Shown here: in pieces, positions 1-33,426 of the stretch
Layout of the letters: each line of letters begins with the position of its first letter
Position numbering within the stretch: position 1 is the first letter of the stretch
Source of the DNA: Ostrea edulis
Lineage: Eukaryota
Direction: 5' to 3'
Assembly (NCBI RefSeq): GCF_947568905.1
Contig: NC_079166.1
Span: 26,784,001-26,848,000, forward strand
DNA: 64,000 nt
Translations under genes and position numbers: made by a program
Notes under the pieces: generated by a model
Seen by the model: the letters and a program-made list of their open reading frames with translations, nothing else
Told to the model about the DNA's origin: nothing
The model's database searches: none

Positions 1-116
1 TTCATACACTAGCAAAGTCATATAGGGCATAGCACAAACAAGACTTAATAATGATAAATATTGCTTTTGTAAATAATTCACTGCCTTGAAATATACTGAA
101 CAAATAATGTTATCAT

Positions 117-460
117 GTAGTTTGATATATAGCATTATACCTGTGAGATGACCTCGTTTGTTTCTGTAGTTTGATATATAGCATTATACCTGTGAGATGA
201 CCTCGTTTGTTTCTGTAGTTTGATATATAGCATTATACCTGTGAGATGACCTCGTTTGTTTCTGTAGTTTGATATATAGCATTATACCTGTGAGATGACC
301 TCGTTTGTTTCTGTAGTTTGATATATAGCATTATACCTGTGAGATGACCTCGTTTGTTTCTGTAGTTTGATATATAGCATTATACCTGTGAGATGTCATC
401 ATTTGTTTCTGTAGTATGAGATATAGCGTTATACCTGTGAGATGGCCTCGTTTGTTTCTG
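117..460. repeat. Intronic minisatellite, 49-bp unit, about 7 copies
   Basis: GTAGTTTGATATATAGCATTATACCTGTGAGATGACCTCGTTTGTTTCT recurs at 117, 166, 215, 264, 313, 362 and 411. Confidence 0.95.
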
Positions 461-651
461 TCGTGGGAATTAAACATCTGGGTATATTTTAATTTGCTGG
501 GATGTGGCAGTGCCATATTCCTAAAATATCAAATATCAACCATTGTTATGCCACACTACAAGAGAAAGTTAAAATAGACATTTCATTTCATTCAATAAAC
601 TATATTTACAATATTAAGAGTAAATCTGGCTCAAATTGAGAATATACAAAC

Positions 652-3600
652 CCTGCTGCCGGTGCAGGTGCTGGAGCTGGTTGTCCAAAGGAACCAGCTC
701 TTGATTTGTTAGCCAGCATCGCACCAGGTACTCCCACGGATGGTGGTACACCTTAAATATATACATAAATATATATAAACAGGTTATCTCCAATACATTT
801 GTGTACTATAAATGTTTGGAATCCACCAAATCTAGTCAATGATGTTTGACCATCATATCAAATCCTCAAATCATGTTTCTCAACCCAGCCCACTTACCCA
901 TCATGGGGACTCCATTAGTCATGATGGGCACGCCCATACTGCTAGGTGCTACCACAGTAGAGGCCATTCCCATCGCCGGCATTCCTAAATTACAGGAACA
1001 TTTTTGCTAATTTTTTACTTGTAAATATCCATGGATATTTCTAACAGGCAAATTAAGAGTTTGTTGACTTTATCATCTTTTCATTTTGGGCAATATTAAT
1101 CCTGAATTAACTGCACTACATGTAATTTTGAAAGAGTGACATCATACTTAGTACGCGTGATATTACAGATATATCGTAAACTTAGTACACATGTGATATT
1201 ACATATATATCGTACACTTAGTACACATGTGATATTACATATGTATCAAACACTTAGTACACATGTGATATTACATATATATCATACACTTAGTACACAT
1301 GTAATATTACATATATATCGTACACTTAGTAAACATGTGATATTACATATATATCGTACACTTAGTACACATGTATATATATCGTACACTTAGTACACGT
1401 GATATTACATATACAGTGGAACCCCGTTATTACGTTCCCCCTTTATTACGTTAGTCCGCATATTACGTTGGAATTTCAAAGCACAAAACCATTTCTTAAC
1501 AAACCTATATAAAATAGACCTCGTTATTACGTTGTCCTAAAATGCAGGGACTCGGTATTACGTTGTAAATATTCCGACAAAAACGTATTAAACCCCTAAT
1601 TATTCAATAGTGATTCTCAAAATAATAAGCCATTCACACCTTGACTGCCTGAGGCAGTCACCACGTAAATTTCCTGGTCTGTTTGGGGATTAGAGACGCT
1701 TGACTGATCATGCTTCGATAGATCTAGCGACATAATACAGGTGAATACCCCGTATAGAAGCCAGTGATAAACAATTAAATAATGTTTATTTAGAAATTGT
1801 ACTCTATGAAATTTACTTCATTTTTCATATTTTGATAATCAAAGAAATAATTTCTCATCCACCTGCGTGTTCAGCATAGTGTGATTACCTTCGCTATTAA
1901 AACTCTATTCACGGACAGCTTTGGTACCAAACAAGAAAGACAAAATTTATCGTAGCAATGTTACAACCGCTTGGGTAACTGTTTGGACATAGGTGACTAA
2001 AGGTGTTCAATTTAAAAAATTGTTCGTTGTTTGGACATGCAGTTTGTGTGTTCGTAAATCTCGTCCATACATACACCAATATATCGGCCGATTTGTGTAC
2101 AGCATTTACCTCAGTGAATATTTTAAAATCCCTTGATGCGCACGTGATTTTAGTGCCATCATTTAGCGTTATAAATGAAATCTTCGTACATCACTATACA
2201 TTTTTTTTATGTGGATTGCGCTTAAATTGTTCTCCGTGCATGTTTATCGTTGATGAGAAGTGTGCAAGTGTTGGGTATCGTGTGCGTTTTGTGTCTATAG
2301 TTTTGTTGTTTTTTGGGTGGGATTTTTTTATTGTGTTGTGTATTGTGTAATTAGAGAACTTAATAAAAACGATGTTTCGTTATTTTTTAATACGAATGTT
2401 GAATACGAACCGGAATGAGTTATTGAGAGAAATTTACATGAACGCATTGTTTTAAAGTTGAACAAAATGGCGGTCCAAACGAATGAAGAAAAAAAGCAAC
2501 GTCTATCAAAACATCCTTATGTATCCTACACCGAAATAAAGAAAAGGGATAAGAACATGAAGAATTACGGACATTAAAGATAAGATGTAACTAAAACAAA
2601 GTATCATAGTCTTTTAAACAAAGAAACAGTAAAGATATATTCACACACCCCTTCACGGAGTACCAACGGACGATATACAATTTCCAAATGGTATTTTTAA
2701 TGGATTTAACTGGGAACGTTTATTACGTTGCCCCCGGTATTACGTTATTTTATCGTGACAAAATGGAAAACGTAATAACGGGGTTCCACTGTATCTCGTA
2801 CACTTAGTACACATGATATTACATATATATTGTACACTTAGTACACATGTGATATTACATATATATCGTACCCATTCCCATCACAGGTTGTCCTGCCGTG
2901 GATATGGCACCAAACGATCCCATGGACGGCGAAGGGTCAGCTTTCAGTGATGGTGGAAGTGTTTTTGGAAGCTCAAATCCTTGCAGCTTCTTTTTTATTA
3001 AATGCATCGCTATTGAAAACTCTTTTTTGTCCATTTTGCCATCACTGTTCATGTCAGCTAGTTGCCTGGAAACACAGACAGAACATATTTGAATGTTATT
3101 ATGCACTGTTCAGCAAAACATTTCCTACCCACGTAACTTTCATGCTAACGCGGTGAAAAATAATTAGGCCCCATTATAGATTTGTCTCGCGTTATCTAGC
3201 TACTTTAAAGTCACAATACTTTTGTTGAACGGGTACAGTTTTAAATTTGCCCACACATAATATACATGTTAGTGAAATGGGTGAAAATAAAGTGAAGAGC
3301 AAAGACCCGCACTTAACAAAATACACAAACATATACATTATATAATTACATATACAATTCACCATGACATGATGAAAAATAACTATGAAATTGAAATTTA
3401 ACATCCACTGATAATTACTATCAGCTATGCACTAGATCTGTCCCACAACTATGGGGTATAAATAAACTCAGTCTAATTAAATTCAGATCTTCTCCAACTG
3501 TTAAACTGGAGAAGGTATAAAGGTTAGAGAAGATCTGATTTTGATTCGATTGAAATAATCTTAGAAAACATTATCCAATACCATCTCACAAATGTTTATG

Positions 3601-6600
3601 CAGTCAATAATTTCCTTTAAATGTAGGTTTATTGAACATGTTTTATCCCAAATCTGTGAGTGTCCTAGGTCCATGTTAAGTGGATATGACATTTCAAATC
3701 AGCGTTTCTTAAGTTGGAGAGGGTGGTTTGTGTCTCTGTGTCTTTGTTGCATGACAACCTTACCATATCTGCCCTAAAACAGCTGTTGGCAACCCCGACT
3801 GCAGGAAAAACCCTCTCGCTTGTTCTCCTGTGAAAATCAACAACAATCTCTTAGATAAAGAACTTAGTCTACATGTAAAAGATTAGCCAGCTTATCTTGA
3901 AATTCTGTTAAAACCTTTACTGAATTCACAAGCACCTGCTGCTGTTGACAGGTTTGGGGAGTTTCTAGTTAAAAACCTTTACTGAATTCACAAGCACCTG
4001 CTGCTGTTGTCAGGTTTGGGAAGTCTCTTGTTAAAAACCTTTACTGAATTCACAAGCACCTGCTGCTGTTGTCAGGTTTGGGGAGTTTCTTGGTTATTGC
4101 TTGGAATTGCCAGGTTATCTAAACATATAACCGGTTTTTGTAGCAGTCATCCCTTGCTACTAAAATCACACTTAATACATGTACAACAGACTGTTCCTTT
4201 AATTCCAATTTTGTAAATGTATTCAAGCTAGTCTCCGAATTAACTGATGTGTACTGTACTTGACATCAACATGTAAAAGAAATTATGACAGCTCTAGTGC
4301 TGTCAAGATTAAACGAAAAGTCGGTAAACTGCAACAAAAACACATTCAGTTCAGTTCATATTTTCCAAATTTCCGTTTGGTTTATGTTTCACAATATCCC
4401 ATTTTCTTTGCTGCAAGCGATACGTTTGGGTCGATATTTTTATCATTATTATTCTAACCAATGAAATATGAATTTCATGTAACATCGGTAATAGTAAAAC
4501 GAAACATTGTGACATGTGCAAATCACAAGGTGAAAATACTTTTAATTATTCTTAGAAGGGGAGAGACAGAAATTTTTAAATTGCAGTGTGCAAAATATGC
4601 AAGTTCGAGTTTACGTATGCATTAGGATCGCGGTAACTCAGTGGTATAGAGTGTTAACTTTGTGACTGGGAGATCGTGCATTCCAGCCCCACTCAAACCC
4701 GAGACATGATTGCTCCATCACCAAATGCAGAACATTCAAAGGTGAAATTAAGTCACAGGTTTTTTCGGAATATGACCTTAAAAACAGAGGTCCCATGTCG
4801 CTAAAGGCACTGACAAGTTTAAGAACCCTTACTGTTACAGGCCTGAGCACCATGCATTGGTCTAACCTTGCTGTACCTAACCTACAGCTTATAGCCAAAT
4901 ATAAACATGGTCAAAACTCTTCAGAGCTTATGTTGCCTATTGCATTGTACATATTAGCTTTGTCTTAAAATAAATATCATTTACCTATTGCTATTTTGTT
5001 ATTAAAATTTGTATAGATCAAAATGCATTAGAAATTTATAACGAATACTAATCACTTCAGGGTCCACATTATTCTTGAATTCACTAACGTATTTTATCAC
5101 ACAAAATAAAACCGAACCAACAAATAACAAGATTTTGTTTCCTGGCATGGATTTCTCAAAATAATCTTATGTCGAAACTTGCACTTACTCAAATTTTGAC
5201 TACTCAAGTGAAGTAAACTCAAACTTAAGTTTGTAATGAGATTTTTTCGAGAAATCCAAGCCTGCCCAGATCTGAACCAGAATTGTGCGAATCACGACAG
5301 CCGTACACAGCCTGAACCAGAATTGTGTGAATCACGACAGCCATACACAGCCTGAACAGATCTGAACCAGAATTGTGTGAATCATGACAGCCGTACACAG
5401 CCCGAGCTTTCACTAACTTCTTACCTGTAATGAAGCCATTGACAGGCTTAAGCTGGAAGAACTGCGAGTCATGCTTAGCACGATCTTCACCTGTTATCTT
5501 CCAGGCTGCTGCCCCTGGAAATTAAAATTAAACCATATCAAATTAACTTACTAACCGACGCAAAGGGCTTGTTAGAATTAGTCTGGGCTAGAAAAAATTG
5601 TCTCAAAAAAATAGCCCCTGCATGGGCTTAAGAAGAATTACGATAGAAAACGGGAATTATAGCCAAAAAAACTATGATTGAATTCACTTTTCCTTCCCAA
5701 ACAAACTATGATCGCGTTAACTTTTCCTTCCATTACCATGTCACTATAACACTTGTTACTTTGACTAGATAACACTGTTGTTGAAAAGCATTTTAGCGAG
5801 TGTGAATATTGTATTCACGGAAATCTTCACCCCCATATCATTTTGCCCCTTTCGCCCCCTCGACGGTGGGCAAATTTAAGACTAGATAAAACTGTCTTCA
5901 CATCTTCGTTTTAACACAATATTTAAAATGAGACGAAACCGTCTGCAAGTGTTGAGAGGTGAAAATAACGGGGTGAAATAATCCTGTATATATACAGCAT
6001 GTCACAGACCTACAACATGAATGCCTTTAAAAGTCAAGTGTGGTGTCGAAGCAAAACATAGGGATGGAAATGAAACTATTGTAAAAGTGGTTACTTACAC
6101 TGGGGGTTAAGTACACGTTTTCCACGACCAACATTACACAGGAGGAGGGGGGGGGGGGATACGCATTAATTTAACTCAATATAATATATATATTATACCA
6201 AATATTCATAACAACTATACGCATGGGGGAAATTTACACACTTCTTTTAGACCGCATTATTAGCGTAAATTTCCCTCATATGTAAATAGTCACTTATACA
6301 GTAAAAACAAGTATAAGATATATGAGGAGAAATTAACCTTTTAAATGTGGCTTTCATATGATGGTAACTTGGACCTAATGGTTTGCACACTGTGTAGCAA
6401 AAAAAAACAAACACCCTGACTTAGCGAATATTGAAACAAAATAATAGGATGATGCCACATTATTCTGATTTTTTATTTGATTTTTCTGGGATAGTAAGAA
6501 TGACAAATCCATTAGCCCTATGGGCTTGTGGCTTAGGAAATTTTTTCAAGATTGACTGTACTGGAAAGTTAAAACACAAAGCCTGGTGAAATAACCACTG

Positions 6601-8427
6601 TGAACTTAATGTGTAGGGGATCTGTAGTGAGACCCTTTAATATGATCAAGGGGTTTGTCACTTCACCAGGTTGAGTGGTTCAATGCCATCTGTGTTTGCC
6701 TTAATTGCTATGATTACAGATCTATTGTCTGATTTGAATATTAGTAGGTAAAACATAGACTTACAGGGAAAGGCAACCCAACAGATTTATACATGATAAA
6801 TGATAGGATTAATTATATGATTAAGATTTGTCATACTATTCTGTTGAAATACGGCCTAGATAAGCGTCAGTATTAATTTGAAAAAGTTAAAAATTGAAAT
6901 TCCTGCGATCTATAGAGGCTGCCATGATGTGTAACTCTTTTCTGTTCAAGACCACAAAAATCAATAATTTTGACGTCACACCGTCTGTTCCGGTTTTGAT
7001 GAGATTCTAAGATCATCAAAGATATGCATGTGGTAGATCTTACGAATAAATAGGTTGATGCCTTCCTGTTAAGCAGTTAATTAGACACTAATGCAAAAGG
7101 GAGATGTGAAAAGAGGTTTTTTTTTCAAAATTCTCGACCCAACCAAGTCATTTGAAAAGAAAAGACTATGTAAACTGTGGATCCATCATTTGCGTAATGA
7201 CAATTTGAGGTTCAAAACATTTGTATGAAGAAATGTTTACCGTCTGCCTGGTTTGCGACTCGACCGAACGTCTTTTCTCAATTTCTTCTTGCGAAAGAAC
7301 AAGCTCAAATCTATATGGCTAAAAACTTAACTGTTCGTGACTTGTCATGTTTACAGTGCTACTGAAGAAATAAACCAGAACAGACGGTGTGATGTTATAA
7401 ACTACACATCAATAGCCGCTCTCTTAGCAGCGGGTAATTTAAAATACATGATAGATTAATATTGATTTAATTGTTAAGCAAGGATTTTTGTAAGACTGTA
7501 ATTCACGATATCAGTAAGTGATACTTTATTCATAAAAACAACAATGTGATTAAGGCTGCTTTTCCCTTTAAAAGTAACTAATTTGAATTGTTAACAAAAA
7601 AAGAAACATAATACAATTCTTACGGCGTAAGTTTGAAAAGCGTTAAATTCATTTTTCTGGTGTAATATAGTTTAAAGTAATGTGTGAAAGAATTATGCCA
7701 GAAGCAAAGGGGTAGACAGCTTTTTGTATGAGAAATGCCATTCCCCCAAAAAGTCTTTTATCATTACGAATTTAACCTTGTGACATATATGACCTTCAAA
7801 AGACTCTGACATCTAATTTGTGAGTTAATTGTGGTTTCACAAGGAGATGAAAATCAACCTTTTAACTTCAAAGATGAGAATTTTTTCCTGTTGTTTTGTA
7901 AATGCTAATTGTGAAATAGATTCAACATGTTGTTCATAATGATAAAAAATTCTAGCACATCTGATTTCGATCAGGAAAAAGAGAGAGGAAAAAAACGGAT
8001 TAATCCAAAAATTTACTGTATGACGGCATGTCATACAAGTATATCATTCAAACACTTAAATAGCTTACATTTTGGTGCTTGAAAATTACTTAAATATGAA
8101 ATATACCTACTTCTTTTTGCTGTTAACAATTTAGAAAGACAATTGTGATAATCATACATGCAGCTTTGAAATAACTTTGCTTGCCTTTTTTTAAGATCAA
8201 TGTAACACATAGACTGCACTTTTACAAGAGGTGCACTGCCATAAAAAAAAAAACACTCCACAATAACCATTTGTTTCTTTAAACAACCTAACAATGAACA
8301 AGCGCCTCCTTACACATTTTGATAAATGATGACACATTTTCAACAATTCCTTTGGAATCATTATAAGTAGGGCCTGTCAGCTTTCTGATCATTTCTTATA
8401 TATAAACTCACCAGCCGCTGCTGCCAT
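652..8427 (-). CDS. ITSN1: Intersectin (EH-domain endocytic scaffold), 5' part only; gene continues beyond the left edge. Coding exons (minus): 8412-8427, 5425-5514, 3764-3827, 2872-3065, 898-984, 652-751
   Basis: Spliced translation [97 protein letters not shown]... matches the first EH domain of intersectins (human WAITVEERAKHDQQF...GDQARNFFFQSGLP...LAQIW.LAD.N.DG.MD..EFSIAM.LIK.KLQG..LP..LPP), followed by an M/G/P-rich linker. All junctions are GT-AG with consistent phases (1,1,2,1,1). The donor at 651 is the least certain. ITSN1 versus ITSN2 cannot be distinguished; invertebrates usually have one gene. Confidence 0.93.
1145..2871. repeat. 36-bp minisatellite in ITSN intron 4, split by a transposon (arms 1145-1413 and 2792-2871)
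   Basis: Unit CTTAGTACACATGTGATATTACATATATATCGTACA. It explains the 12-aa repeat ORF at 1136-1393. Confidence 0.9.
1414..2791. mobile_element. Non-autonomous Tc1/mariner (pogo/Tigger-like) DNA transposon, 1378 bp
   Basis: TIR CAGTGGAACCCCGTTATTACGTT / AACGTAATAACGGGGTTCCACTG, TA duplication at 1412-1413 and 2792-2793, repeated subterminal TATTACGTT motifs. No transposase ORF recognised. Confidence 0.9.
3907..4092. repeat. Minisatellite, about 61-62 bp unit, 3 copies
   Basis: GTTAAAACCTTTACTGAATTCACAAGCACCTGCTGCTGTTG... starts at 3907, 3968 and 4030. Confidence 0.9.
4625..4895 (+). mobile_element. Degenerate tRNA-headed SINE with a Deu/Nin-like body
   Basis: A-box-like GGTAACTCAGTGGTATAGAG head, then TTCGGAATATGACCTTAAAAACAGAGGTCCCATGTC, homologous to the body of the other SINE copies in the window. 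Confidence 0.6.
5142..5264. mobile_element. Small MITE-like inverted-repeat element (about 123 bp)
   Basis: Imperfect IR of about 40 bp: CTGGCATGGATTTCTCAAAA... / ...TTTTCGAGAAATCCAAGCCTG. No TSD recognised. Confidence 0.5.
5267..5403. repeat. About 40-bp minisatellite, 3 copies, close to the ITSN exon 2 donor
   Basis: CTGAACCAGAATTGTG(C/T)GAATCA(C/T)GACAGCC(G/A)TACACAGC starts at 5272, 5312 and 5362. Confidence 0.9.
6972..7398. mobile_element. Old TIR element remnant
   Basis: 26-bp inverted pair TGACGTCACACCGTCTGTTCCGGTTT / AAACCAGAACAGACGGTGTGATGTTA about 375 bp apart, with more diverged inverted similarity extending outward. Ends are uncertain. Confidence 0.45.
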
Positions 8428-9183
8428 CTTGGTTCTCCGATATCAGAATAACTGTTCTTATCTCCACGCAAACTATAATAAAACAAAATATTAAATAAAT
8501 TCATATATCTAAAATCAAACTAAAAATATACCTACACCAAACTTCCATCATTATCATTAAAATCCTAGTATAAATTGTACCGTGGTTATGTAACATGTTT
8601 TGATTGACTTGTTATATTAACAGGTCTGCAGGTCATTAATGCTCCAATCACAACCGCAAATCAAGACCTGCAATCACACTAAATCTGTTAATCAAACTCA
8701 AACTCCTACAGCACAATGCTACAATTGCAGTTTGTATTATATGATGTTTTTTGTTTTTTTTCTGCTACATCTCTTTGAGATGTGATAGTTGATTTATACT
8801 GATGAGTGATGATGCACTACATTAATAACTGAACACACATTGCATCATGTTGGTCAGATTCAGCTGTTTTACTGAGAGTCGACTCTTCAGTACAGTTCAT
8901 TAACACACTGTCCAGGAAACGTGTAACAAATCAGATACAAGATATGGAACGACACACATTACCAAGTATAGATTTTCTGTCTTTGAAATCTCTCTCATGA
9001 ATTATGATATATCTGTTTAGAATTTATTTCAATTTTAGTATCCAATTTCCGTGGTTCATTCATTCACCAGACAATTATCTCTAAAGTTCTCAACAAGTCT
9101 CAGTAGAAGGACATGGAAACTATCAGTAAGACAATAATGGAAATGGATAGGTCATGTTCTACTTAAAAAAACTGACAGCATAG

Positions 9184-10970
9184 CCAAGATTGTCCTTCTC
9201 TCACAACAAAACCAAGATCTCCCTTCTCTCACAGCATAACTAAGATCTCCCTTCTCTCACAGCATAACTAAGATTGCCCTTCTCTGACAGTATAACCTAG
9301 ATTGCCCTTCTTTCACAGCATAACTAAGATTGCCCTTCTCCGACAGTATAACCATGATCTTCCTTTTCTCACAGCATAACTAAGATTGCCATTCTCTGAC
9401 AGTATAACCAAGATCTCCCTTCTCTCACAGCATAACTAAGATTGCCCTTCTCTGACAGTATAACCAAGATCGCCCTTCGCTCACAGCATGACTAAGATTG
9501 CCCTTCTCTGATAGTATAACCAAGTTTGCCCTTCTCTCACAGTATAACTAAGATTGCCCTTCTCTGACAGTATAACCAAGATCGCCCTTCTCTCACAGCA
9601 TAACTAAGATTGCCCTTCTCTGACAGCAGGGCTCAAAATTAGCGAGAAATACTCGCAAAATGCGAGTACATTTGAAAAATAGCGAGTAAAAATAGTGGAC
9701 ACTCGAAAATCTTAGCGAGTGGTGATTTACAAACCATGATCGTATTGTATCCGTTTTATATGGTGATGCGCTATTCGCCTTTCTTAAACTTTCATTCAGA
9801 ATCATACAAACACTTACATGAACGACCGATTTCAACAACCGTTTCTATCCGGATTTTTCTTTTATGATTTTTTAAGAAACTCGGAGTCAAACAAATGCTT
9901 TAGAGGTCGGACATCACATTATGATGAAAAATATCGACATGTGCCACGAGTCCTGTTCACCTATAGGGGTGATTAAATTGAATTCCAAGTATGAGGTTTT
10001 TGTTATTCATTTATCTTTTAAAAAATTCAGAGTCTATGTTTCACCAAGTCTTCCGGAAGTCATTTTTATCAGAATGACCTACATGGTATCTACATTAATT
10101 TATTGTCATATTGTCTTACTGATGTCGGGTTGTAGTGATGATATGAGTGCACTGCTCGGCGCGTAGACCATCATCAAAAAAGTCCATGGGACTCATGATC
10201 GTGCTGCTTATAAACCATGAGTCCGGGATTCGCTTTGAAAAATCACTAATGACACCCCTGATGTGGCATGAAATTGGAAGACAATGGATCTAGACCTGCG
10301 GTAAACAGGTTGTGGATTAGAGGTGCGATGGTCAAGAGACCTAAACATTGCACCATATGACTTACGTAACTTAGTCTCTTGTCCAAACGATTCCTGTTGA
10401 CCCACTAGGATCAATGATGGGGAAAATCATTGATTTAAAAAAAACTATGAAAAAAAGAGCACTGCTTCATTATTCTTATTTTAGCTTGTAGGTTTTCATT
10501 TTAGCCTGTGTATTTTTTACCCACAGACTAAAATTAGACTGTGGTAGAAAAAGTTAATTTCGACCCCTGGACAGTATAACCAAGATCGCCCTTTGCTCAC
10601 AGCATAACTAAGATTGCCCTTCTCTGACAGTATAACCAAGTTCGCCCTTCTCTCACAGCATAACTAAGATTGCCCTTCCCTGACAGTATAACCAAGATCT
10701 CCCTTCTCTCACAGCATAACTAAGATTGCCCTTCTCTGACATTATAACCAAGATCTCCCTTCTCTCACAGCATTTAACTAAGATTGCCCTTCTCTGACAG
10801 TATAACCAAGATCTCCCTTCTCTCACAGCATTTAACTAAGATTGCCCTTCTCTGACAGTATAACCAAGATCACCCTTCTCTTACAGCATAACCAAGTTTG
10901 CCCTTCTCTCAGAGCATAACTAAGACTGCCCTTCTCTGACAGCATAACCAACTGAAGATAGCCTTCTCTG
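9184..10970. repeat. 28-bp minisatellite with alternating A/B variants (56-bp higher-order unit), split by a transposon
   Basis: CCCTTCTCTCACAGCATAACTAAGATTG alternates with CCCTTCTCTGACAGTATAACCAAGATCT on both sides of 9627-10569. Confidence 0.92.
9627..10569. mobile_element. Non-autonomous DNA transposon with CAGGG termini and a 5-bp TSD (hAT5-like), 943 bp
   Basis: CAGGGCTCAAAATTAGC / GTTAATTTCGACCCCTG imperfect TIR. GACAG is duplicated at 9622-9626 and 10570-10574, and the repeat unit shows the empty site. Confidence 0.85.
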
Positions 10971-11242
10971 GACATACAAAGACACTTTTAACAATATCAA
11001 CACAATCGCCCTTCTCAGTCTTCAAAATCAGCCACTGGCTCAAATACCAAATGAAGTAATACTGGAGTTAGGATTATTATATCATTACATATACAAGACC
11101 ATCAGGCCTGTGTTTTTCATCTACATCACTGACTTCATGCTAAAACTATATTACCATAAATTCAAATGGAGTGATGATTCATAATCAATATTAAAGATGG
11201 TGATCCTATATCACTTAAATTGAACTAATTTTGACTAAAACC

Positions 11243-11323
11243 CACAGGCAATATATTACATCGCTTGGGTTCAAATTTACTCTTTAATAATAAATTCGAA
11301 CCCGAGCAATATAACTGCCTGTG
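11243..11323. repeat. About 80-bp imperfect palindrome (probable MITE core)
   Basis: CACAGGCAATATATTACATCGCTTGGGTTCAAATTTA / TAAATTCGAACCCGAGCAATATAACTGCCTGTG. Confidence 0.6.
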
Positions 11324-13011
11324 CTAAAACCCTCTCAATGATTTCATGTACTCTCAAAACTGGAGAAAATAATACTTTATGTTTGATTTGAGTCAGTGAA
11401 TTTCTCTTTCAAATTGATAGAGTAAATAGTCCAGACATAAAAAGACACAAAGCTCCAAAAAGTTTTCCATGAAGACTGTCTTCTCTGGATATTGGAGAGA
11501 ATTCTTACAGTATAACCCAGAGGGACCCCAGCAGCGTAATGAAAACCGGAAACACACTGCTGCTCTACATACCAAATGTAGTGAGGCAGTTCAAAGTACA
11601 TCAGAATCCATCGTCCTCACTGTCTTGCTGTCCTACTTTAATTGTGAAAATACACCTGTTACCCTGCTTTAAGATATGCGTTGACAATAAAATTGTAAAA
11701 AAAAAAAAAAAAAAAAAAAAACAGCTAGAAGTCAGCTTTTACAGCATGCAGAAAATGTAAATAACAGGAAAGTTCCCAAATTTTCCATATCAAAAACAAA
11801 ATGGAGAAATTCTGTATTCTTTTGCAGCGATTAAGTGTAAAATTCAATCATTACTCCAAAGTGAATTTGATACTAGGACTTCTCAAAACATATCACACCT
11901 ATGGTTCACTATAATCATGATAATACTTCACAGTCCTGAATGATAAATATCTGTTTGATTAAGATACGATAACCTTTAGGCACACCATAGATACAGTTAC
12001 TTTTTCACTGCGACTGTTTTCATTCTACTAACAAGAAAATAACACAGGCATCCAAGTTTATGAACCTAAGTTTGCACATAATTAAATATTTTCTAACAAA
12101 ATGAAAGTGAACAAGATGCCATGCAAATTCACAAATAATGGACAGACAGACTCACGAACACTTACAGACAGACAAAATAAAGTTTCAATGTTGCTATGCT
12201 TTGTAAGCACATAAAAATGAAGCACATAAACCTATACAAATGATCAGAATTATTACACAAGTTTTAAAAACTCATCTTGTATACAGATACAAACACTTGA
12301 ACTTTGAACATATTCACATTTCTTAGAATTGATAGATAGTACTGACATTGAAGATTTGATGAAAATTCTGTCATGGACAATATATGGTTAGATAAAAAGT
12401 ATGTAATTGTAATTCTGAATTTGATTTGCCAACCCCAAGACTTTCTCAACTTTTAAGAGCTAGTACAAATAGTCAACTGACCTGTGTTGTGCCAAAATAA
12501 AGAAAGAAAGGAAGGAATCCTGTTAACTTCAGGAAAATGAACCACAAGATTGGGCACATTGTGTTGCAGTAAATTACAAGGTTTTATTTTCATGGTAAAA
12601 TTCTGGCCTGACCTTTAGGACTTGAACAAATTTAAATCATAACGCTCAGTGCAAGAGCTTGAAGTTGCATTTGCGACCCAAAAATTTATATTTTGCAACT
12701 AGAAATTAAATGTAAGTTACATTTCACAGCATAACCAAGATGGATAGATATATAGACATTAGTGGACAATTGGGAAAAAAATATTAATAAATTATCGGAT
12801 GCGCCTTTTCAATTGATTAATCGAAAAATAATCAAATTTCATTCATTTAAAATTTATGGCATAAATATTACACTTTACTTTTTACCCTAAATATCATCTC
12901 AATTAGAATAAATTCATTAGAAATGAGAAGTTAATAATCCCATACTTTCTATTTTGATTTTTGTTTTCCCTGGATAAGGATAGATCTCTTGACTTTTATT
13001 GTTGTTCTTAT

Positions 13012-13231
13012 GGGATGTGGGTTAGAATAGGGCCTCAGTACCCTTTGCTTGTCGTAAGAGGCAAAATCCGAGGCTCCGTGTCATAGCAGGTGTGGCACGA
13101 TAAAGACCCCCTCCCTGTTCAAAAGCTGTAAGCGCCGAGCATAGGCCTAAATTTTGCAGCCTTCACCGACAATGGTGACGTCTCCATATGAGAAAAAGAT
13201 TCTCGATGGGGACATTAAACAATATTCAATC
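13012..13231 (+). mobile_element. SINE, Deu/Nin-like family without a tRNA head (internally deleted copy)
   Basis: GGGTTAGAATAGGGCCTCAGTACC...GCTTGTCGTAAGAGGC...GTGTCATAGCAGGTGTGGCACGATAAAGAC...GCGCCGAGCATAGGCCTAAATTTTGCAGCC...AAACAATATTCAATC. The same family occurs at 31833, 41962, 45932, 47754 and 59371. Confidence 0.85.
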
Positions 13232-13365
13232 TTATTGGATGACTGCTTCGTCAGCCCTTTTGTTTATAGTTAAATTGCGGCAGGAATATTCGTATCATTA
13301 AAAAAATATACCATAATGATGTCAGTGATTTTCAATTTACAAAATGACAACCGATTATTCACATC

Positions 13366-14736
13366 CAGTGCTCGAGCCAATGGCGAATTTTATTCAAAAA
13401 TGGCGAAAAAAAAATTAAAGTGGCGAAAATCCCTCTTTGCAATGAATTGTATTTTAAAATTTCCTTTGTCAGTGACACATTTATCACCTGCTTGTTTATG
13501 CAGTCAAACTCTGTTTATTCAGTCAACGCGTGCGACCGGAAATCTCGCGTCGCTCCAGTGCACACAGAGCTGGTCACGAAGGCCAGATAATAGCTGCAGG
13601 TAATGTATGGCTGCAAAAAAGTCTGTGATTATGTAATAAAGTACATCGGACAGCTGTTTACCCTGCTGTGGTCAATTGTTTAACATTTAAAGTCTTATTC
13701 ATTATCGTGTTATCTCCACATTAATGTCAATTCTTAACCACAGGACCGACCGGTAATTAAATTGGCCGTATTATTGTTTATAATGTATATACATCAATTG
13801 TTTGTTTTTGCGGCCAAGCTCGTTGATTACAATGTTTTGATTGTGATGTGTTTGATTTCATAAACATTGCGGTCGGTCACCATTGATATGGACATAGCAA
13901 TTTTAATATATAATTTTTTTTGAAGTTCTGAAGTTCGGTGCGCAACGGTATAAAAATGCTACAGACTGTGGACAAAAGTATTTGCACGATCGCGTCATTT
14001 TTCAAACGTGTTTATCGAGTATCGTACATTGCGGGTTATCTCTCTTTGCACATACATGAGTTATCCTTTCACTGATGATGTATTTAAAACGTTGAAGGTG
14101 AATTATGTGAAGTAATGATGTTTGTGTTCGTCTGCAACTCTGTTATACATGCAAGGGAGTGATTAGAAAACATGGGTTGGAAACATCGGGACTCAGTAAT
14201 CTCATAAGACTATGCACCCCATACTATTTTGACACTAAACTTGTAGCTTCTGACCCTATAGTCAGTCTAAAATTCAAAAAATATCTGTTTGGCTTTACTG
14301 TCAACCCCACCTGCTTAAACATCCGATTCTGTCCTAATTGCAAAATCTTCCATACAAAAACGGAAGTTCATTAGGGAATGGTTGAGACTCTAATTTGGGC
14401 TTGATGTTTTGGGACATCTCCATTTCGGGCAATGTACACAATGTTTTCACTGAGGGGTGTAGCATCATGAAGTTTATATTTATATCATTATGATTTATTA
14501 TCTGATTTTTGATTTCCATAATAGAATTTATCAAACAAATCAACTTCTTATTATTTCAGAAAGAAGTGTTTAGGTATGGTTGCTGGATATGATTAAGTAA
14601 TGTAACTGATTCAAAATCAGTGTAATGTAATGAATAAAATAATATGATGGAAATAATTGTAAAGCATGAGATTATTTGCGCTGCGCCGCACCACGAAAAA
14701 GTGGCGAAAGGGAATTTTGGTCCAGTGGGAGCACTG
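13366..14736. mobile_element. Non-autonomous hAT element, 1371 bp, 8-bp TSD
   Basis: Ends CAGTGCTC / GAGCACTG. TTCACATC is duplicated at 13358-13365 and 14737-14744. Subterminal TGGCGAA motifs at both ends. Confidence 0.88.
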
Positions 14737-15277
14737 TTCACATCGTTTCAGTTATAGCGACCGACAATCAAAAGTCGGCGACAATCAGTACTCCACAAGT
14801 CTAATAGAAATACATACATGTTTTATTTACAATGTGTTTTCAAAATGGCGAGTAAACTATAGATTTGTTCATGGTGACCAAAAAGTTTGAAATGGTGACA
14901 AAAAGTAACTTTAGGTCGTGATTTGCGACTTGTCATAAACTGCGACTGAAAGCACTGCGAAGTAATGCATTAGCATTATAATTTCTATGTTAACAAAACG
15001 TATTGAATAAATATTCAATACGAAAATCCATTTTTCAGACACCAGTCACTAAAGCTGAGATTTATTGATTTTAAATATAGGCTTTCTCCGAAAACATTAC
15101 GTTGGATGAATTAACTTAAGTTGTTCGACATCCACTTAGAGGACGCAAATCTACATCGAGAACACAATTTAATACACTGAAAATGAATTTAGTGCAGTAA
15201 GTTACTTGTTGGATTATTAATTATGGGCCGTCTGCACTGCTGTCTGATACCGGGATACCAGAGCACCAACAGCTTAC

Positions 15278-15564
15278 CATTTCAGAGCATTATCTGCTTT
15301 TCTTCATCACTGCATTTCTTCAGAACATTATCTGTAACTTTTCAAAATGGTACAGATATCGGTATCAACATAAACTAAGTTGGAAAACCCACTAAAAATC
15401 ACATCAAATACACCCCAACAGTTACCGGAACTTGAACTGGATTGTGGGAAAAGTAGGCGTGATATCAACTTCCTGTTGTAGTCTAGTTTCACTTTACAGC
15501 ATGTGATGTAAAAACAAACGACTGTTGTTAGTGGCTTTCAAGTGTTTAATGCATAGAGAACAGG
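15278..15564. promoter_or_regulatory. Putative bidirectional promoter and non-coding first exon of intersectin, shared with CRYZL1
   Basis: A minus-strand donor ATG|GTAAGC sits at 15278/15277. ETS-like CCGGAA (about 15426) and ACTTCCTG (about 15469) motifs are present. The CRYZL1 ATG is at 15565. A strong minus-strand acceptor (TTTTATTATAG) at 8473-8474 precedes the ITSN ATG exon. The TSS is not determined. Confidence 0.5.
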
Positions 15565-18500
15565 ATGAAAACTCTAATTTTGGATGTTCAAAATGAACAG
15601 GAACCGAAATTCGTTTTAGAATCTAATGTAAACTTTTCTCCCTTGCAAAATTAATATCACGTCTCTGTAAACGTATAAGAAAAGTCTTAGCCACTAAAAA
15701 TATGCACCCTGTGTTTTGAGATTTCTATAAAATCGCGTGGTTTGTATTGCAGGAGGCTGATCCTATCCCAGATAAATATGACGTAGTTGTCCAAGTGAAG
15801 GCATGTGCATTGTCGACGCCTAATATCAAGGTAGCAATATACGCGAGCCAGCGGATCAAAGGATCTAATTATATCTCCCCTCTTTCAGGGGAGACATATT
15901 GTTTTTGTACTGTCTGTCACAAAATCTTGTGATTGCCTCTCCTCCTATATGGCTTATCGGATAGACTTGAAACTTTGTACAATTATATATGCTTCATTGC
16001 CATTTGTAGATGTGCATATTGGTGGAACAGGAGAATTCAATTATAATGTTTATTATATTTAGGGTGTCTGGGTAGCACAGAGGTAGCGCTCTCACTTCCC
16101 ACCGCTGCAACCAAAGTTTGATCCCCATGATCGGCAGTGGTTGTATGTGAGAGAGTATGACGGTTTCCCGTTCGGACACAATTGGGTTTCCTCTGAGTAT
16201 TCAGATTTCCTCCTACATAACTAACCCCCTAACGCAAACATCCATGCATCAAAGGATCCCATTCCGTGCATCAAAGGAGCCCATTGGAAATAAGCTGTCA
16301 AGCTTTCATGGGTTACCCTTGGTATTTATATCTGTATGTATGCATGTATATATTATACCGATACTTATATGGCTTATTCACAGGGGCAAAGCCTGTTTTA
16401 GGCCCAATCTCTGATACTATAAATATTGTATTTATAGTATCACAGAGTTTGGGCCCAAAACGGGCTTAGCCCCTGAGGGCTTATAGGATATATTTGAAAC
16501 TTTGTGCAGTGCTTCATTGCCATTTGTAGATGAAACAGGAGAATCCAATTATTTTCCTTCAATTTATAGTGGATCTAAGAGGGGTGGTGGATGTAAAATA
16601 GCTTGTGAAAATTTCTCCTCCTATGTGGCTTATCAGATAGATTTGAAACTTTGTACAATTACCATTTGTGCATATTGCCGGGACAGGAGGATCCAATTAT
16701 TTTCCTAAAAGTTATAGTGGATCTAAGAGGAGTGGAGGATGGTTTATCAGAGTTCATAATGTCTTCCTGCTCATGCTTTCTCCTCCATACCATGCAGTAC
16801 AATAAGGGGAGGAGGGTTTATTTGGAGTACAGCTTCCAATTTGGGGAGCTGGGGAGACATTTGTTTTTCATAAAAATTTTAATTAGATACATGAACCAGT
16901 CCTTCAATCTGATTAAAATCAAATACTTTGATTCGCATGACAATACATTACCAGAGTGGATCAAAGATCTGATTTTAATCACATTGACCAGACCGTTCGA
17001 TTCAGTTAAAAGAATATAATTCATATTTCTTTTCAGTCTGATTGGTTGATGAATTGGTCAGATTCAATCAATGTGTTCTCACAAAATAGACACTAAATAG
17101 TTAACAGATTGCAGAGTATTTTGTTGAAAATGCCTCTCTCATCATACTGATCTCCTCTCAATATACTGATCTCCTGCATAGAATGCTGAATATCATAATA
17201 TATATCACGTACATTATGAAGCATTATCCTTTTTAAATCTGCCCTGGATTTCTTGTTGTAAAGAGTATTTAATTGAATAAAATATTATATTACAGTACTT
17301 TTATATGAGTTCACAAAATAAGTGCATTTCCAAGTTTGTATAATTAGATATATATCTGATTTAATATGTATACACATTACAACAACTTTTCTGATATTGG
17401 CAGGTTCTTTCAGATGTGTACAGGAAGCACCCTCGCAGTAGATACCCTGTAGGGTATGAGGTGGCTGGTGTTGTCACGGAAACTGGGCCTGGTGTCAGTA
17501 ATGTAACTATTGGTGATTCGGTTGTTGGTAAGTCATTTTTTTGTGTATTTTGTTTTCTCTATTGTCTCTCATGACATAGGTTGAACAGTATGTGTAGAAT
17601 TCACCAATGGCCAATCTTCAGATATTGAAGGGTATTTGTCATTTCTGTGTTTACATCTTTCAATCACATAATTTTGTGATTTTGAACATTTGGAAGAATG
17701 ACTAAGGTTAGAATAAAAGTGCTGGAGATTGCCTCTACTTTATCAACCTGCACTTTGGGCCAATTCATGCAACCTAAGTTTGCTTGTAAAAGACCTTTTA
17801 AAACTGAAAACTTGCATGGAGCATACAGTGGAGTGGCTATCATTTATTGTATCTTCAAGATAAACATAATAAATAATTTATCATATAAGGGAATGGTTCA
17901 CGTTTTTCGAAAGAAATGTTTTTCATTTTTGATGTTACAAATTAAAAATATAGCTTGTTTAATGATGGCAACCACAATTTGGACTGTCTAAATGTGAGGA
18001 TAAGAGCAATATTTTAGCTTTGATTCTGTTATGTAAACAAAGACTCAAGTCTTTTTATGTAAACAAACAAACTAGTGAAACGTTAATTTTGTTATCATTT
18101 TATGTAAAGTATACTTGAGATGTGATATAAATAATAAACTTGGATCAATATCCATTTATTTTGAAAACCCCATAAACTATAACATACCTCAATCTTTGTT
18201 TTCAAAACAAATAACAAACTCTCTCTCTCTATCATGAGCTTCTGTCATGATGAATAACCTGATTTTTTGTGAAACCTTCTAAACATATTGGACAGTAGAT
18301 TTTGAACAATTAAAGTGAAAAACAAAATTTGGACGAAAATCGTGAATCAGTCCCTTTAATGTTAGCTAAAGAAATTTAAATCTAGGAAATTCTTTTATTG
18401 ATATTTTTCACAAGATTGAACCACAAAAGGGCCATAAAACTTTCAACTAACATAGTGTTGAAGTTTGAACTAAGATTCACTTTTATGAAAGGAATATACA

Positions 18501-21500
18501 TGCAGTGATAAAGAAAAATTCTAATGAGAAGTGAAGATTTATGGTCCTATAGCATTGATCTCATCATTTAACCTGGGATTAAATTGTATTAAATATTTCA
18601 TGAGAAAATGCAACTACTTGTATTTACTGAAAGGTGAGCAATGTTGTCCATGGGCCTTGTGTTTCACAGGCCTGTGATCTGTATAATATACTCCCCTTTC
18701 TTGTATTATAATAGGTATTGTGTCCCTGGGAAGTCATTACTCTGGCTGTGGGGAGTATTGTCTACTCTCGGAATATGACGTTGGTAAGTTGACACATTTT
18801 TACCTCTTTTAATGATACTGCAATGTCTTGAGTTCTAAATGTATATCGCTAATGTATGCTAAAATTTTAACATTAGTGCCAAATCTTGATTGTGGTAAAT
18901 ATATCTTATATGAAATGACTAGCACTAAACTCTGAAATCCGCTAATTAAAAGTACACATTCATACAGTTTTCTCAACAGTTACAGGAATATTTTTCATAA
19001 CCAGGATCATAAACTGAAAATTTTTCATCTAAATACATGTACCTGTTGAAATGAAATGTAATCAATAAATCAACATTAATTGTCTAAAGCTAATATGTAT
19101 GCATGTACATTGAAATTTGTTACATGTAAGTAGATTTTATCAATCAAATTTCCTCTCAAATCCGTCTACCATGGTTTATGAGATGTTTTGAAAAATATAA
19201 TTTGAAACTGCAATTAATGTCTGATTTTAAAACACATGGTTCTTAAAAACAGAACAAAGTGAAATGACCAGAGATGGTTTTAATTTGAATTGCAACAAAA
19301 TTTTGCAAATGTATGAAAGCTGTTTTCTGCTCTATTTTCAGTAAAGAAGCCAGACCGGCTGAGTTATGAAGAGGCAGTAGCAGGAATTGGAGACTGTTTA
19401 AAGGCCTATACTGCTATGTACTATCAGGCTCATGTTTGTGGAGGTGATACGGTCCTTGTTATAGATGGTGCCACCTCATTCGGAAATGTTGCCATACAGT
19501 TAGCTAGTCTCTGGGGAGCAAAGGTTTCACAATATTCTTATAACCTTGCACGTGCATCTCAAATGTAGTAATGTTATGGCCATCTGGGAGACTATTTATT
19601 ATGCCACCAATAAGTCTGTAAATTGTGTAACTGAGATTTAATGACGTCCATTTTAAATCATGTTCATGAACTAAATTTCAGGTGATTTCTACGGCTAGTA
19701 GTAATGAAGAAAGAGGAATTCTGGAAAATCTAGACACCCCAATAGGTAATTGTATACAGACTCGTGTACAGTATTAATATATAAAATCTAGACACCCCAA
19801 TAGATAATTGTATACAGACTCGTGTACAGTATTAATCTATAAAATCTAGACACCCCAATAGGTAATTGTATACAGACTCGTGTACAGTATTAATCTATAA
19901 AATCTAGACACCCCAATAGGTAATTGTATACAGACTCGTGTACAGTATTAATATATAAAATCTAGACACCCCAATAGATAATTGTATACAGACTCGTGTA
20001 CAGTATTAATCTATAAAATCTAGACACCCCGAACAATATTTATATATACACGTTCACAAAATACGTTTTAAATGACCTTGACATATATTTGCTTTTGACC
20101 TCAACGTTTCAGTTTTCCTATCTTGAATAGTTCAAAAGTGTTGGTTAAATTCAAAGTTGCACATATAGATGAAGAAACACATAGCAAAGAAAGAAAACTT
20201 GCTTACAGCATTGAATTCTAAATTCTTAAAAATTAGTATTTAGAGTACATGATAGATTAATAGGCACTTTTTTCTCTTCATGTATCATACCTATTGACAT
20301 TGACATATTGAATTCTATTCGTTCGGATCCTTTTGAGGTTCTCTAATCATCAACCTTTTATCAGCACAGATAATTGACCTTGACCAGAGAAGTAACATCC
20401 TGGTCAGCAGTGTGATGGAGGAGACAGGAGGTGTGGGGGTGGATGTTGTCGTTGACAATGGGGGTAAGGAAAGTTTGCAAGATTTATCTATTGATTTACT
20501 GACAAAGTTAATAGATTCTGATGTTTTTTATCCTGTAATACCATGAATTTTATTTTCTTAGTCAGACAATTTAATGATGAAGAGGACCAGAAGGTTGTGG
20601 GTGAAAACTTAAGGTATCCCAAACCACACAAGCATGATGTCATTTCCTGTCTAGGGGCCTCTGGGAAGTGGATTACACAACAATCTTCTCTTCAGGTATT
20701 GATACTGATAAAATCAAATATATTATGCTGTTTGTAGATATCTGGATTTCTAGTCAACTCGTACCCTGACCGACTCGTACCCAGGTCAACTCATACCCCA
20801 TAGGTCAACTCGTACCCAAAAGGCAAAAGTCATCTCGTACCCAAGAATCTTCCCATAATGCAATATATCTATGCGCATATAAGTGACATATCGCTTAGGT
20901 ACGAGTTGTCATCAATTAAAGAGGAGGAGTCAACTCGTAACCAGATTCTTGGGTACGAGTTGACTTTTACCTTTTGGGTACGAGTTGACTTATTGGGTAC
21001 GAGTTGACCTGGGTACGAGTCGGTCAGGGTACAAGTTGACTTGACTCCGATATCTGTACTGTGTCTTTTTATAGTTGCTGTATCCATCGAGTTGAAATGG
21101 TATAGGTCTATACAAGTACATGTATTTGTTGAGAAATAACATCACATTGGATAAAGCAAATAAAAGTAATGGGATTCAAGAGGAACGGAGTGAACTAAAC
21201 TGTCTGCATTACCTGACATTGCTTGTGTATCCATTTATCAATATAAAGTACCTTTGTAGGTCTTTAAAATGTGAATCCAATTATCTCCCCTCCATGGCTC
21301 TAGCAATCATTTAAACAATAAAATACTTTCTTTGTTGTTTCATTAGGTTGCTGAGGGTAGCAAGCATTGCAGGAAAAACAGAAAAAATTCATAACCCACT
21401 TTTTTCTGCAATGATTACTACCGTCATCGTCTATTAAAACAACAAGGAGAGACATTTTATTTTGAAATAAATAATAAAATCTTTAAAATACATGTATGAA

Positions 21501-29214: not shown

Positions 29215-29265
<51 letters not shown>

Positions 29266-29767: not shown

Positions 29768-29815
<48 letters not shown>

Positions 29816-33377: not shown

Positions 33378-33426
<49 letters not shown>

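What the first reader, a model, noticed from the sequence alone, without database searches (positions are those of the whole stretch)
8412..15830. Intersectin and CRYZL1 are head-to-head, as on human chromosome 21
Sequence: ITSN (minus) and CRYZL1 (plus) diverge. A candidate ITSN non-coding first-exon donor (15277) lies only 287 bp from the CRYZL1 ATG, with ETS-like motifs between. Known: human CRYZL1 and ITSN1 are adjacent and divergently transcribed at 21q22.11. Both act in the endocytic pathway (ITSN is an endocytic scaffold; CRYZL1 belongs to the Rab5-effector FERRY complex). Inference: the pair has been kept as a shared bidirectional promoter since the bilaterian ancestor, despite heavy transposon traffic in the 6.8-kb ITSN 5' intron.
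Basis: partly seen in the sequence, partly recalled or inferred. Interest (0 to 1): 0.75.

Follow-up and report, generated by a model that had tools for sequence, protein, structure and literature searches.

The report
Ancient intersectin–CRYZL1 head-to-head gene pair
In the flat oyster, the endocytosis gene intersectin and the quinone-oxidoreductase-like gene CRYZL1 start back to back within about 70-300 bases, and the same arrangement occurs in a brachiopod, a ribbon worm, two echinoderms and a fish, so it is an old but ordinary type of conserved bidirectional gene pair.

Summary
The window is Ostrea edulis (identical to GCA_947568905.1). Intersectin (ITSN, minus strand, ATG 8427) and CRYZL1 (plus strand, ATG 15565) diverge.

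Spliced RNA-type contigs from two runs of a close relative cover 15278-15408 and stop exactly at 15278. One of these contigs continues for 1,256 nt that lie outside the laid stretch. CRYZL1 contigs begin at 15475 and splice 15627>15753. The two transcribed regions are therefore about 66 bp apart.

I could not show directly that the 15278 exon joins the ITSN ATG exon at 8472. Only one 6-kb read-laying run was allowed.

The same divergent CRYZL1-ITSN adjacency is present in:
- Lingula (brachiopod)
- Lineus (nemertean)
- Acanthaster and Anneissia (echinoderms)
- the teleost Antennarius

Cattle have the same gene order. The pair therefore dates at least to the protostome-deuterostome ancestor. I did not see CRYZL1 within 10 kb of ITSN in an annelid, a tunicate or a spider.

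All positive species have a tiny ATG exon preceded by a predicted acceptor, which points to a conserved non-coding exon 1. The ETS-like motifs are oyster-only and weak evidence.

This is a new member of a known kind (conserved 5'-5' microsyntenic pairs) and of moderate interest.

The parts
8412..8472 (-). ITSN exon 2: 45 nt of 5'UTR, ATG at 8427-8425, then MAAAAG. Predicted acceptor AG at 8474-8473 after a T-rich tract; donor GT at 8411-8410.
   Evidence: Sequence. CDS start of the RefSeq model: L003 position 10001 equals window 8427.
8473..15277 (-). ITSN intron 1 (5'UTR intron), 6,805 bp. Satellite arrays at 9172-9628 and 10570-10951. High-copy repeats at about 9900-10700 and 12700-14900. 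Single-copy stretches at 10700-12700 and 14900-15277.
   Evidence: Tandem repeats. DNA-run depths. No Rfam family.
15278..15430 (-). ITSN non-coding exon 1. RNA contigs align to 15278-15408, with 11-22 further unaligned contig letters upstream. Donor ATG|GTAAGC. Seven short upstream ORFs.
   Evidence: table 8: records 6 and 13. Bin depths are fully accounted for by these pieces. Sequence.
15409..15474 (.). Gap between the two sets of RNA contigs; putative shared core promoter.
   Evidence: the depth in bin 15300-15499 is fully explained by the exon-1 and CRYZL1 pieces.
15425..15432 (+). ETS-core match CCGGAACT.
   Evidence: 8 such matches in 64 kb, both strands.
15468..15474 (-). ETS-core match AGGAAGT.
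   Evidence: 16 such matches in 64 kb, both strands.
15475..15627 (+). CRYZL1 exon 1: at least 90 nt of 5'UTR, ATG at 15565, 21 codons.
   Evidence: records 7 and 14. Sequence. 100% match to L003.
15628..15752 (+). CRYZL1 intron 1 (GT..AG).
   Evidence: table 5: the joint 15627>15753 appears in X1 and X2 only.
15753..15830 (+). CRYZL1 exon 2 (EADPIPDKYDVVVQVKACALSTPNIK).
2872..5514 (-). ITSN exons 3-5 (5425-5514, 3764-3827, 2872-3065), encoding EH domain 1. Further exons lie at about 893-990, 650-752 and 433-520.
17395..22159 (+). Further CRYZL1 exons lie inside these open stretches: 17395-17571, 19317-19565, 20337-20543, 20522-20734, 22022-22159.

Best explanation
This is the 5' junction of two divergently transcribed Ostrea edulis genes, intersectin (minus strand) and CRYZL1 (plus strand).

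ITSN starts with a non-coding exon 1 at 15278 to about 15430. That exon is spliced across a 6.8-kb repeat-filled 5'UTR intron to a 61-nt exon that carries the ATG (8472-8412). CRYZL1 transcription starts at or before 15475.

The two transcription units are therefore separated by roughly 45-66 bp, which makes this a bidirectional promoter.

The head-to-head arrangement was inherited from at least the protostome-deuterostome ancestor. It is most simply retained because the two core promoters overlap: any breakpoint or insertion between them would decapitate one gene. The neighbouring ITSN intron and the flanks are free to change.

Shown:
- gene identities
- use of the donor at 15278
- CRYZL1 splicing
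- the short gap between RNA contigs
- the adjacency in six animal lineages

Inferred:
- the exon 1 to exon 2 join
- the exact TSS positions
- promoter sharing in the other lineages
- the reason for retention
For: Gene identities.

RNA-type contigs from two runs end exactly at 15278, and one continues 1,256 nt beyond the laid stretch. The CRYZL1 contigs start at 15475/15480 and skip the GT..AG intron. The DNA runs are contiguous and single-copy there.

No protein-coding gene is annotated between the two CDS starts in the RefSeq-derived gene list.

A divergent CRYZL1 orthologue lies 2.1-4.2 kb (ATG to ATG) from ITSN in Acanthaster, Anneissia, Lingula, Lineus and Antennarius. Orthology is confirmed by colinear tblastn hits that include the CRYZL1-specific exons E7 and E8.

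All of these species share a tiny ATG exon (ATG plus 1-9 codons, phase-1 donor) with a polypyrimidine-AG 20-50 nt upstream of the ATG. This implies a non-coding exon 1 further upstream in each.

ATP5PO (OSCP) sits on one side of the pair in Lingula and Lineus and on the other side in Acanthaster. The pair therefore moved or inverted as a unit.

Cattle gene order is ATP5O-ITSN1-CRYZL1-DONSON (PMC6116989).
Against: - The link to ITSN exon 2 is therefore indirect, and an additional TSS near 8.5-8.7 kb is not excluded.
- Contigs cannot define transcript ends or strand. Here the strand rests only on the splice consensus.
- The RNA-type runs belong to a differently labelled organism: 94% identity in exon 1 and 98% in the CRYZL1 piece (5'UTR plus first coding exon).
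- No CRYZL1 exon was found within 10 kb upstream of ITSN in Paralvinella and Styela, and none is listed for the spider.
- Exon 1 carries seven upstream ATGs, which is unusual for a well-translated mRNA.
Confidence: 0.75

Rival explanations
1. The pair is kept together by selection for co-expression, because both products act on the endocytic/Rab5 pathway (ITSN as scaffold, CRYZL1 as the FERRY subunit Fy-4). In this reading the shared promoter is a functional co-regulation device and not only a structural constraint.
For: Both genes are represented in the same two RNA-type runs. CRYZL1 is the Fy-4 subunit of the Rab5 effector FERRY (bioRxiv 10.1101/2021.06.20.449167). The pair survives rearrangements of its neighbours.
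Against: No expression correlation could be measured, because contig depth is not a measure of expression level. No promoter motif is shared across phyla. Many conserved 5'-5' pairs have no functional link (Irimia 2012, PMC3514665). The FERRY paper reports Fy-4 binding sites on Fy-2 only from chordates onward, so a FERRY role in oysters is itself unproven.
Confidence: 0.25
2. The exon at 15278-15408 belongs to a divergent non-coding transcript of the CRYZL1 promoter (a promoter-upstream antisense lncRNA). The real ITSN TSS then lies just upstream of 8472, and the two genes are neighbours at about 7 kb and do not share a promoter.
For: The join to 8472 was not observed (one search covers only 9900-15899). 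Exon 1 has seven uATGs. RefSeq lists two accessions for the same isoform X1 protein, which hints at alternative 5' ends.
Against: The X2 contig continues 1,256 nt beyond the donor, and none of its other pieces is listed in 9900-15277. The ATG exon has a strong polypyrimidine-AG acceptor 45 nt before the ATG, and the same micro-exon architecture recurs in six other species. That makes an upstream non-coding ITSN exon expected. No other gene is annotated in the interval.
Confidence: 0.12
3. The adjacency is coincidental or arose independently in oyster and vertebrates.
For: It was not seen within 10 kb in an annelid, a tunicate and a spider.
Against: The same two orthologues lie in the same divergent orientation in six lineages from both sides of Bilateria, with conserved exon architecture. 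Independent origin that many times is not credible.
Confidence: 0.02

Closest known systems
Vertebrate CRYZL1-ITSN1 head-to-head pair (human 21q22.11; cattle BTA1; teleost Antennarius striatus)
   Same: The same two orthologues are adjacent. The orientation is divergent in the teleost. Cattle order is ATP5O-ITSN1-CRYZL1-DONSON. The sea star even shares the vertebrate continuation ITSN-ATP5PO-MRPS6 (the human order is from my own knowledge).
   Different: The oyster has no ATP5PO nearby. Its ITSN 5'UTR intron is 6.8 kb of repeats, and there is no CpG island. Human orientation and TSS overlap are from memory and were not tested here.
Conserved ancestral microsyntenic pairs (CAMPs) in 5'-5' orientation, e.g. 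HSPD1-HSPE1 (Irimia et al. 2012, PMC3514665)
   Same: A non-paralogous gene pair is kept adjacent and divergent across protostomes and deuterostomes, with a very short inter-TSS distance typical of bidirectional promoters.
   Different: ITSN and CRYZL1 are not named in that paper's main text. Its supplementary lists were not available, so prior listing cannot be excluded. Co-expression was not tested here.
ETS/GABP-type bidirectional promoters of mammals (recalled from the literature, not checked here)
   Same: Two ETS-core matches lie in the 66-bp gap between the divergent transcripts. There is no TATA box.
   Different: Neither match is the full CCGGAAGT consensus. There is no CpG island. 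No equivalent motif occurs near the CRYZL1 start in five other species.

Membership tests
Bidirectional promoter (divergent genes with TSSs under 1 kb apart) | The two genes lie on opposite strands and are transcribed away from each other. | tested here: met
   ITSN exons are on the minus strand and CRYZL1 exons on the plus strand.
Bidirectional promoter (divergent genes with TSSs under 1 kb apart) | The transcription start sites are less than 1 kb apart. | tested here: inconclusive
   The RNA-type contigs end 66 bp apart (15408 against 15475), and donor to CRYZL1 ATG is 287 bp. Contigs cannot map true 5' ends, and the exon 1 to ITSN join was not seen. CAGE is needed.
Bidirectional promoter (divergent genes with TSSs under 1 kb apart) | One intergenic segment drives both genes (reporter or deletion test). 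| not testable with these tools
   This needs a two-way reporter assay or a deletion of 15409-15474.
Conserved ancestral microsyntenic pair (Irimia 2012) | Orthologous, non-paralogous genes are adjacent in several lineages spanning protostomes and deuterostomes. | tested here: met
   Positive in Ostrea, Lingula, Lineus, Acanthaster, Anneissia and Antennarius. Not seen within 10 kb in Paralvinella, Styela and Larinioides.
Conserved ancestral microsyntenic pair (Irimia 2012) | The relative orientation is conserved. | tested here: met
   The pair is divergent (5'-5') in all six positive species (same calls).
Intersectin | The N-terminal EH domains are closest to ITSN, not to EPS15, EHD or REPS. 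The full EH-SH3x5(-DH-PH-C2) architecture is present. | tested here: met
   The PDB best hits are the ITSN1 EH domain. The window exons are 94-100% identical to O. edulis intersectin-1-like, whose Pfam list is EH, SH3, RhoGEF, PH and C2. Only the N-terminal exons lie in the window.
CRYZL1 (quinone oxidoreductase-like 1, FERRY Fy-4) | The sequence is closest to CRYZL1 among MDR proteins, including the CRYZL1-specific C-terminal exons. | tested here: met
   7nd2_C is the best match for exon 5 (5e-14, against 1e-3 or weaker for other MDR proteins) and the only match for exon 7.
CRYZL1 (quinone oxidoreductase-like 1, FERRY Fy-4) | The protein assembles into the FERRY complex with Fy-2 and Fy-5. 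| not tested
   This lies outside this finding. The FERRY paper places Fy-4 at the chordate origin.
ETS-driven bidirectional promoter | Conserved ETS/GABP sites lie between the TSSs. | tested here: not met
   Two core matches occur in the oyster. None occurs within 700 bp of the CRYZL1 ATG in the five other species.

The most novel reading that the evidence does not exclude
CRYZL1 and intersectin form an ancient co-regulated endocytic unit: one promoter co-expresses an endocytic scaffold and a Rab5-effector (FERRY) subunit. The unit would have been under selection as a unit since before the protostome-deuterostome split. That is older than the FERRY paper's chordate origin for Fy-4, and the unit may be pre-bilaterian.
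Probability: 0.25. Interest if true: 0.6.

Novelty: new member of a known kind. Interest (0 to 1): 0.45.

Why it matters
The finding adds a clearly documented gene pair to the set of head-to-head pairs kept for more than 500 million years. Here rearrangements of the neighbours (ATP5PO on either side) and a repeat-swollen intron left the roughly 70-300-bp junction untouched.

It gives oyster annotators an RNA-supported non-coding first exon for ITSN.

It also shows CRYZL1 orthologues next to ITSN in molluscs, brachiopods, nemerteans and echinoderms. That conflicts with the published statement that Fy-4/CRYZL1 appeared with chordates.

Whether the linkage reflects functional co-regulation of two endocytic genes is now a testable question.

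Tried and rejected
- **Look-ups lost to isoforms.** Three look-ups (Haliotis X4, Acanthaster X2, Branchiostoma X19) found nothing, because only the longest isoform of a gene is on record. As a result amphioxus was never tested.
- **Fetching the oyster RNA contig through its protein.** I searched with residues 1-400 of the O. edulis ITSN. No fragment above 63% identity was found, so the exon 1 to exon 2 join could not be read.
- **Looking for a cnidarian ITSN.** The unnamed candidate P0350 turned out to be tunicate-like. No cnidarian, sponge or placozoan locus was obtained.
- **ETS, NRF1, YY1, Sp1, CRE and ZNF143 motif scan** near the CRYZL1 start in six species. Nothing is shared.
- **Rfam scan and inverted-repeat scan** of 8000-16500. 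Nothing was found.
- **ATP5PO in the window or in the wider oyster locus.** Absent.
- **Literature.** Seven full-text searches found no paper that describes this pair as bidirectional or deeply conserved. 'Intersectin' as a word-start term also matches 'intersecting' and was useless. The Irimia 2012 supplements are not held.
- **Spliced models.** They were never joined. Exons were searched one at a time by reference.
Full report
**What the window is.** The window has 35% G+C and no N. The probes I compared (window 8001-8427 and 15201-15600) match locus L003 exactly. L003 is Ostrea edulis assembly GCA_947568905.1, record OX387706.1. Window position 8427 corresponds to the CDS start of the RefSeq intersectin-1-like gene, and 15565 to the CDS start of a 361-aa ADH_N/ADH_zinc_N_2 gene. 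The ATG-to-ATG gap is 7,137 bp in both L003 and the window.

**The two genes.** On the minus strand, the exons at 8412-8472, 5425-5514, 3764-3827 and 2872-3065, and further exons to the left, encode the N-terminus and EH domains of intersectin.
- Their best solved-structure matches are human intersectin-1 EH (2khn/3fia: 2e-13 and 2e-8). These score well ahead of EHD, EPS15 and REPS.
- They are 94-100% identical to O. edulis XP_056016290.

On the plus strand, the exons from ATG 15565 encode CRYZL1.
- Exon 5 matches the FERRY subunit chain 7nd2_C at 5e-14, against 3e-4 or weaker for every other protein.
- The CRYZL1-specific exon 7 matches only that chain.

The divergent arrangement is therefore real.

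**The predicted ITSN first exon.** The minus strand reads ...GAAATG|GTAAGC, with the last exon base at 15278. I laid 9900-15899 with two RNA-type runs (X1 and X2, 'organism A') and two DNA runs (X3 and X6, 'organism B').
- X1 and X2 are spliced material. Both skip 15628-15752 (GT..AG), and neither DNA run does. They also leave the single-copy intronic DNA uncovered.
- X1 record 6 (179 nt) and X2 record 13 (1,409 nt) align to 15278-15408 and stop exactly at 15278.
- Record 13 has 1,256 further letters that lie nowhere in 9900-15899, and 22 letters upstream of 15408.
- The bin depths are fully accounted for by these pieces. No RNA contig covers 14900-15277 or 15409-15474.
- The DNA contigs cross 15177-15762 without a break at single-copy depth.
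- The + strand has AC, not AG, at 15276-15277. The boundary can therefore only be a minus-strand donor.
- The CRYZL1 contigs begin at 15475 and 15480.

The two transcribed regions are thus about 66 bp apart, or about 45 bp if the unaligned contig ends are colinear.

**What is not shown.** I could not see where the 1,256 letters go.
- The loose-end table was truncated.
- A protein-based attempt to fetch the contig failed.

Four observations argue that the exon belongs to ITSN:
- The ATG exon has a T-rich tract and an AG 45 nt before the ATG.
- No other gene is annotated in the interval.
- No other piece of record 13 is listed inside 9900-15277.
- The comparative architecture described under 'Conserved micro-architecture' fits an upstream non-coding exon.

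An alternative TSS near 8.5-8.7 kb is not excluded. RefSeq lists two accessions for the identical isoform X1 protein, which fits alternative 5' ends.

**The intron.** Positions 8473-15277 (6,805 bp) contain two 28/56-bp satellite arrays (9172-9628 and 10570-10951). They also contain repeats whose summed depth in the DNA run X3 reaches 10^5-10^6, against about 50 for single-copy DNA. 'Heavy transposon traffic' is a fair description. The last 380 bp before the donor and the whole promoter are single-copy.

**Motifs.** CCGGAACT (15425-15432, +) and AGGAAGT (15468-15474, -) lie in the gap. Each kind occurs 8-16 times in the 64 kb. There is no TATA box, CCAAT box or CpG island. No ETS core, or any other tested motif, is shared near the CRYZL1 start in five other species. 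I treat the motifs as weak, oyster-only evidence.

**Conservation.** An exhaustive profile-free search with ITSN exon 5, cluster look-ups and a word search supplied named intersectins. I then fetched their genomic loci with 10-kb flanks. The positions returned are CDS ranges.

| Species | Group | CRYZL1-like product | ATG-to-ATG distance |
|---|---|---|---|
| Acanthaster planci | asteroid | 360 aa | 2.5 kb |
| Anneissia japonica | crinoid | 356 aa | 2.3 kb |
| Lingula anatina | brachiopod | 354 aa | 4.2 kb |
| Lineus longissimus | nemertean | 354 aa | 2.1 kb |
| Antennarius striatus | teleost | 425-aa model, no Pfam on record | 3.4 kb |

In each of these species a divergent gene lies upstream of ITSN.
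- In Lingula and Lineus, tblastn with the oyster CRYZL1 exons gives colinear hits of 44-59% identity; hits in the other three species run from about 35% to 65%.
- These hits include the CRYZL1-specific exons E7 (PxKH-D/E-V/I-IS...W-V/I-T) and E8 (DPPD...).
- The teleost gene was identified by tblastn, with exons E2-E8 colinear.
- Cattle gene order is ATP5O-ITSN1-CRYZL1-DONSON (PMC6116989).
- The human arrangement is from my own knowledge and was not tested.

The survey also gave negative or uninformative results.
- No CRYZL1 exon lies within 10 kb upstream of ITSN in Paralvinella (annelid) or Styela (tunicate).
- No gene is listed in the flank for the spider Larinioides.
- These may be losses, longer introns or broken linkage.
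- Amphioxus, cnidarians and other ecdysozoans were not reached.

**Conserved micro-architecture.** In all six positive species, and in Paralvinella, the ITSN start codon sits in a tiny exon: ATG plus 1-9 codons, ending in a phase-1 G|GT donor. A polypyrimidine-AG lies 20-50 nt upstream of the ATG. These acceptors are predictions. Their recurrence implies an ancestral non-coding exon 1 upstream, on the CRYZL1 side. Styela lacks this pattern.

**Neighbours move, the pair does not.** ATP5PO (OSCP) is convergent with the 3' end of CRYZL1 in Lingula and Lineus. In Acanthaster it is convergent with the 3' end of ITSN and is followed by MRPS6. It is absent from the oyster neighbourhood. These states differ by moves or inversions that treat CRYZL1-ITSN as a block.

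**Interpretation.** The best-supported reading is an ancestral bilaterian head-to-head pair whose core promoters overlap. Breakpoints between them are not tolerated, whereas the adjacent 5'UTR intron can inflate with repeats. Whether co-expression of two endocytic-pathway genes is selected is open. Contig depth gives no expression level, and the FERRY paper itself reports Fy-4 binding sites on Fy-2 only from chordates onward.

**Comparison with what is known.** This is the class of conserved 5'-5' microsyntenic pairs described by Irimia et al. 2012. Full-text searches found no paper that names this pair as such, and the relevant supplementary lists were not available. I rate it a new member of a known kind, of moderate interest.

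- Spliced protein models were never joined. Each exon was searched by reference.
- No N stretches were involved.

Noticed in passing
window 116-461: A 49-bp minisatellite (7.1 copies, 96% matches) repeats the 3' end and GT donor of the ITSN exon that ends ...RGHLTG|gtataa (exon at about 433-520, minus strand). This is the same kind of splice-site-multiplying repeat noted elsewhere in this window for CRYZL1 and FRRS1.
   Followed up: partly
L001:2603-47475; L004:1-47031; L005:1-52016: ATP5PO (OSCP) is linked to the CRYZL1-ITSN pair in the sea star (CRYZL1-ITSN-OSCP-MRPS6, as I recall for human chr21), and in Lingula and Lineus (OSCP-CRYZL1-ITSN). The oyster window and L003 have no OSCP.
   Followed up: partly
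window 15565-22159; L001, L002, L004, L005: Clear CRYZL1 orthologues exist in an oyster, a brachiopod, a nemertean, a sea star and a crinoid. The FERRY paper (bioRxiv 10.1101/2021.06.20.449167) states that Fy-4/CRYZL1 appeared with the Chordata.
   Followed up: partly
window 15278-15430 (minus) and 15475-15564 (plus): Both 5'UTRs are full of very short upstream ORFs. There are seven uATGs in ITSN exon 1, each stopped within 10 codons or fewer. There are three in the CRYZL1 leader, including ATGTGA and ATGTAA.
   Followed up: no
protein P0275 (O. edulis ITSN isoform X1) and P0290 (Lineus X1): Each identical protein carries two RefSeq accessions. The transcripts therefore differ only in their UTRs, which may reflect alternative first exons.
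   Followed up: no
L006:3884-6624: The teleost cryzl1 model is 425 aa with no Pfam hit on record, against 354-361 aa elsewhere. It is probably an over-extended or otherwise imperfect annotation.
   Followed up: no
window 28136-34425 and 36890-37204: Downstream of CRYZL1 lie a SIMPL/DUF541-domain gene (Pfam 2.8e-6) and a SUEL-lectin-domain gene (4.4e-6). DONSON, the neighbour in mammals, was not noticed in the window (I ran no search for it).
   Followed up: no
L003:37578-39392 (outside the window): A 604-aa intronless ORF without any Pfam hit is annotated inside an ITSN intron of O. edulis.
   Followed up: no
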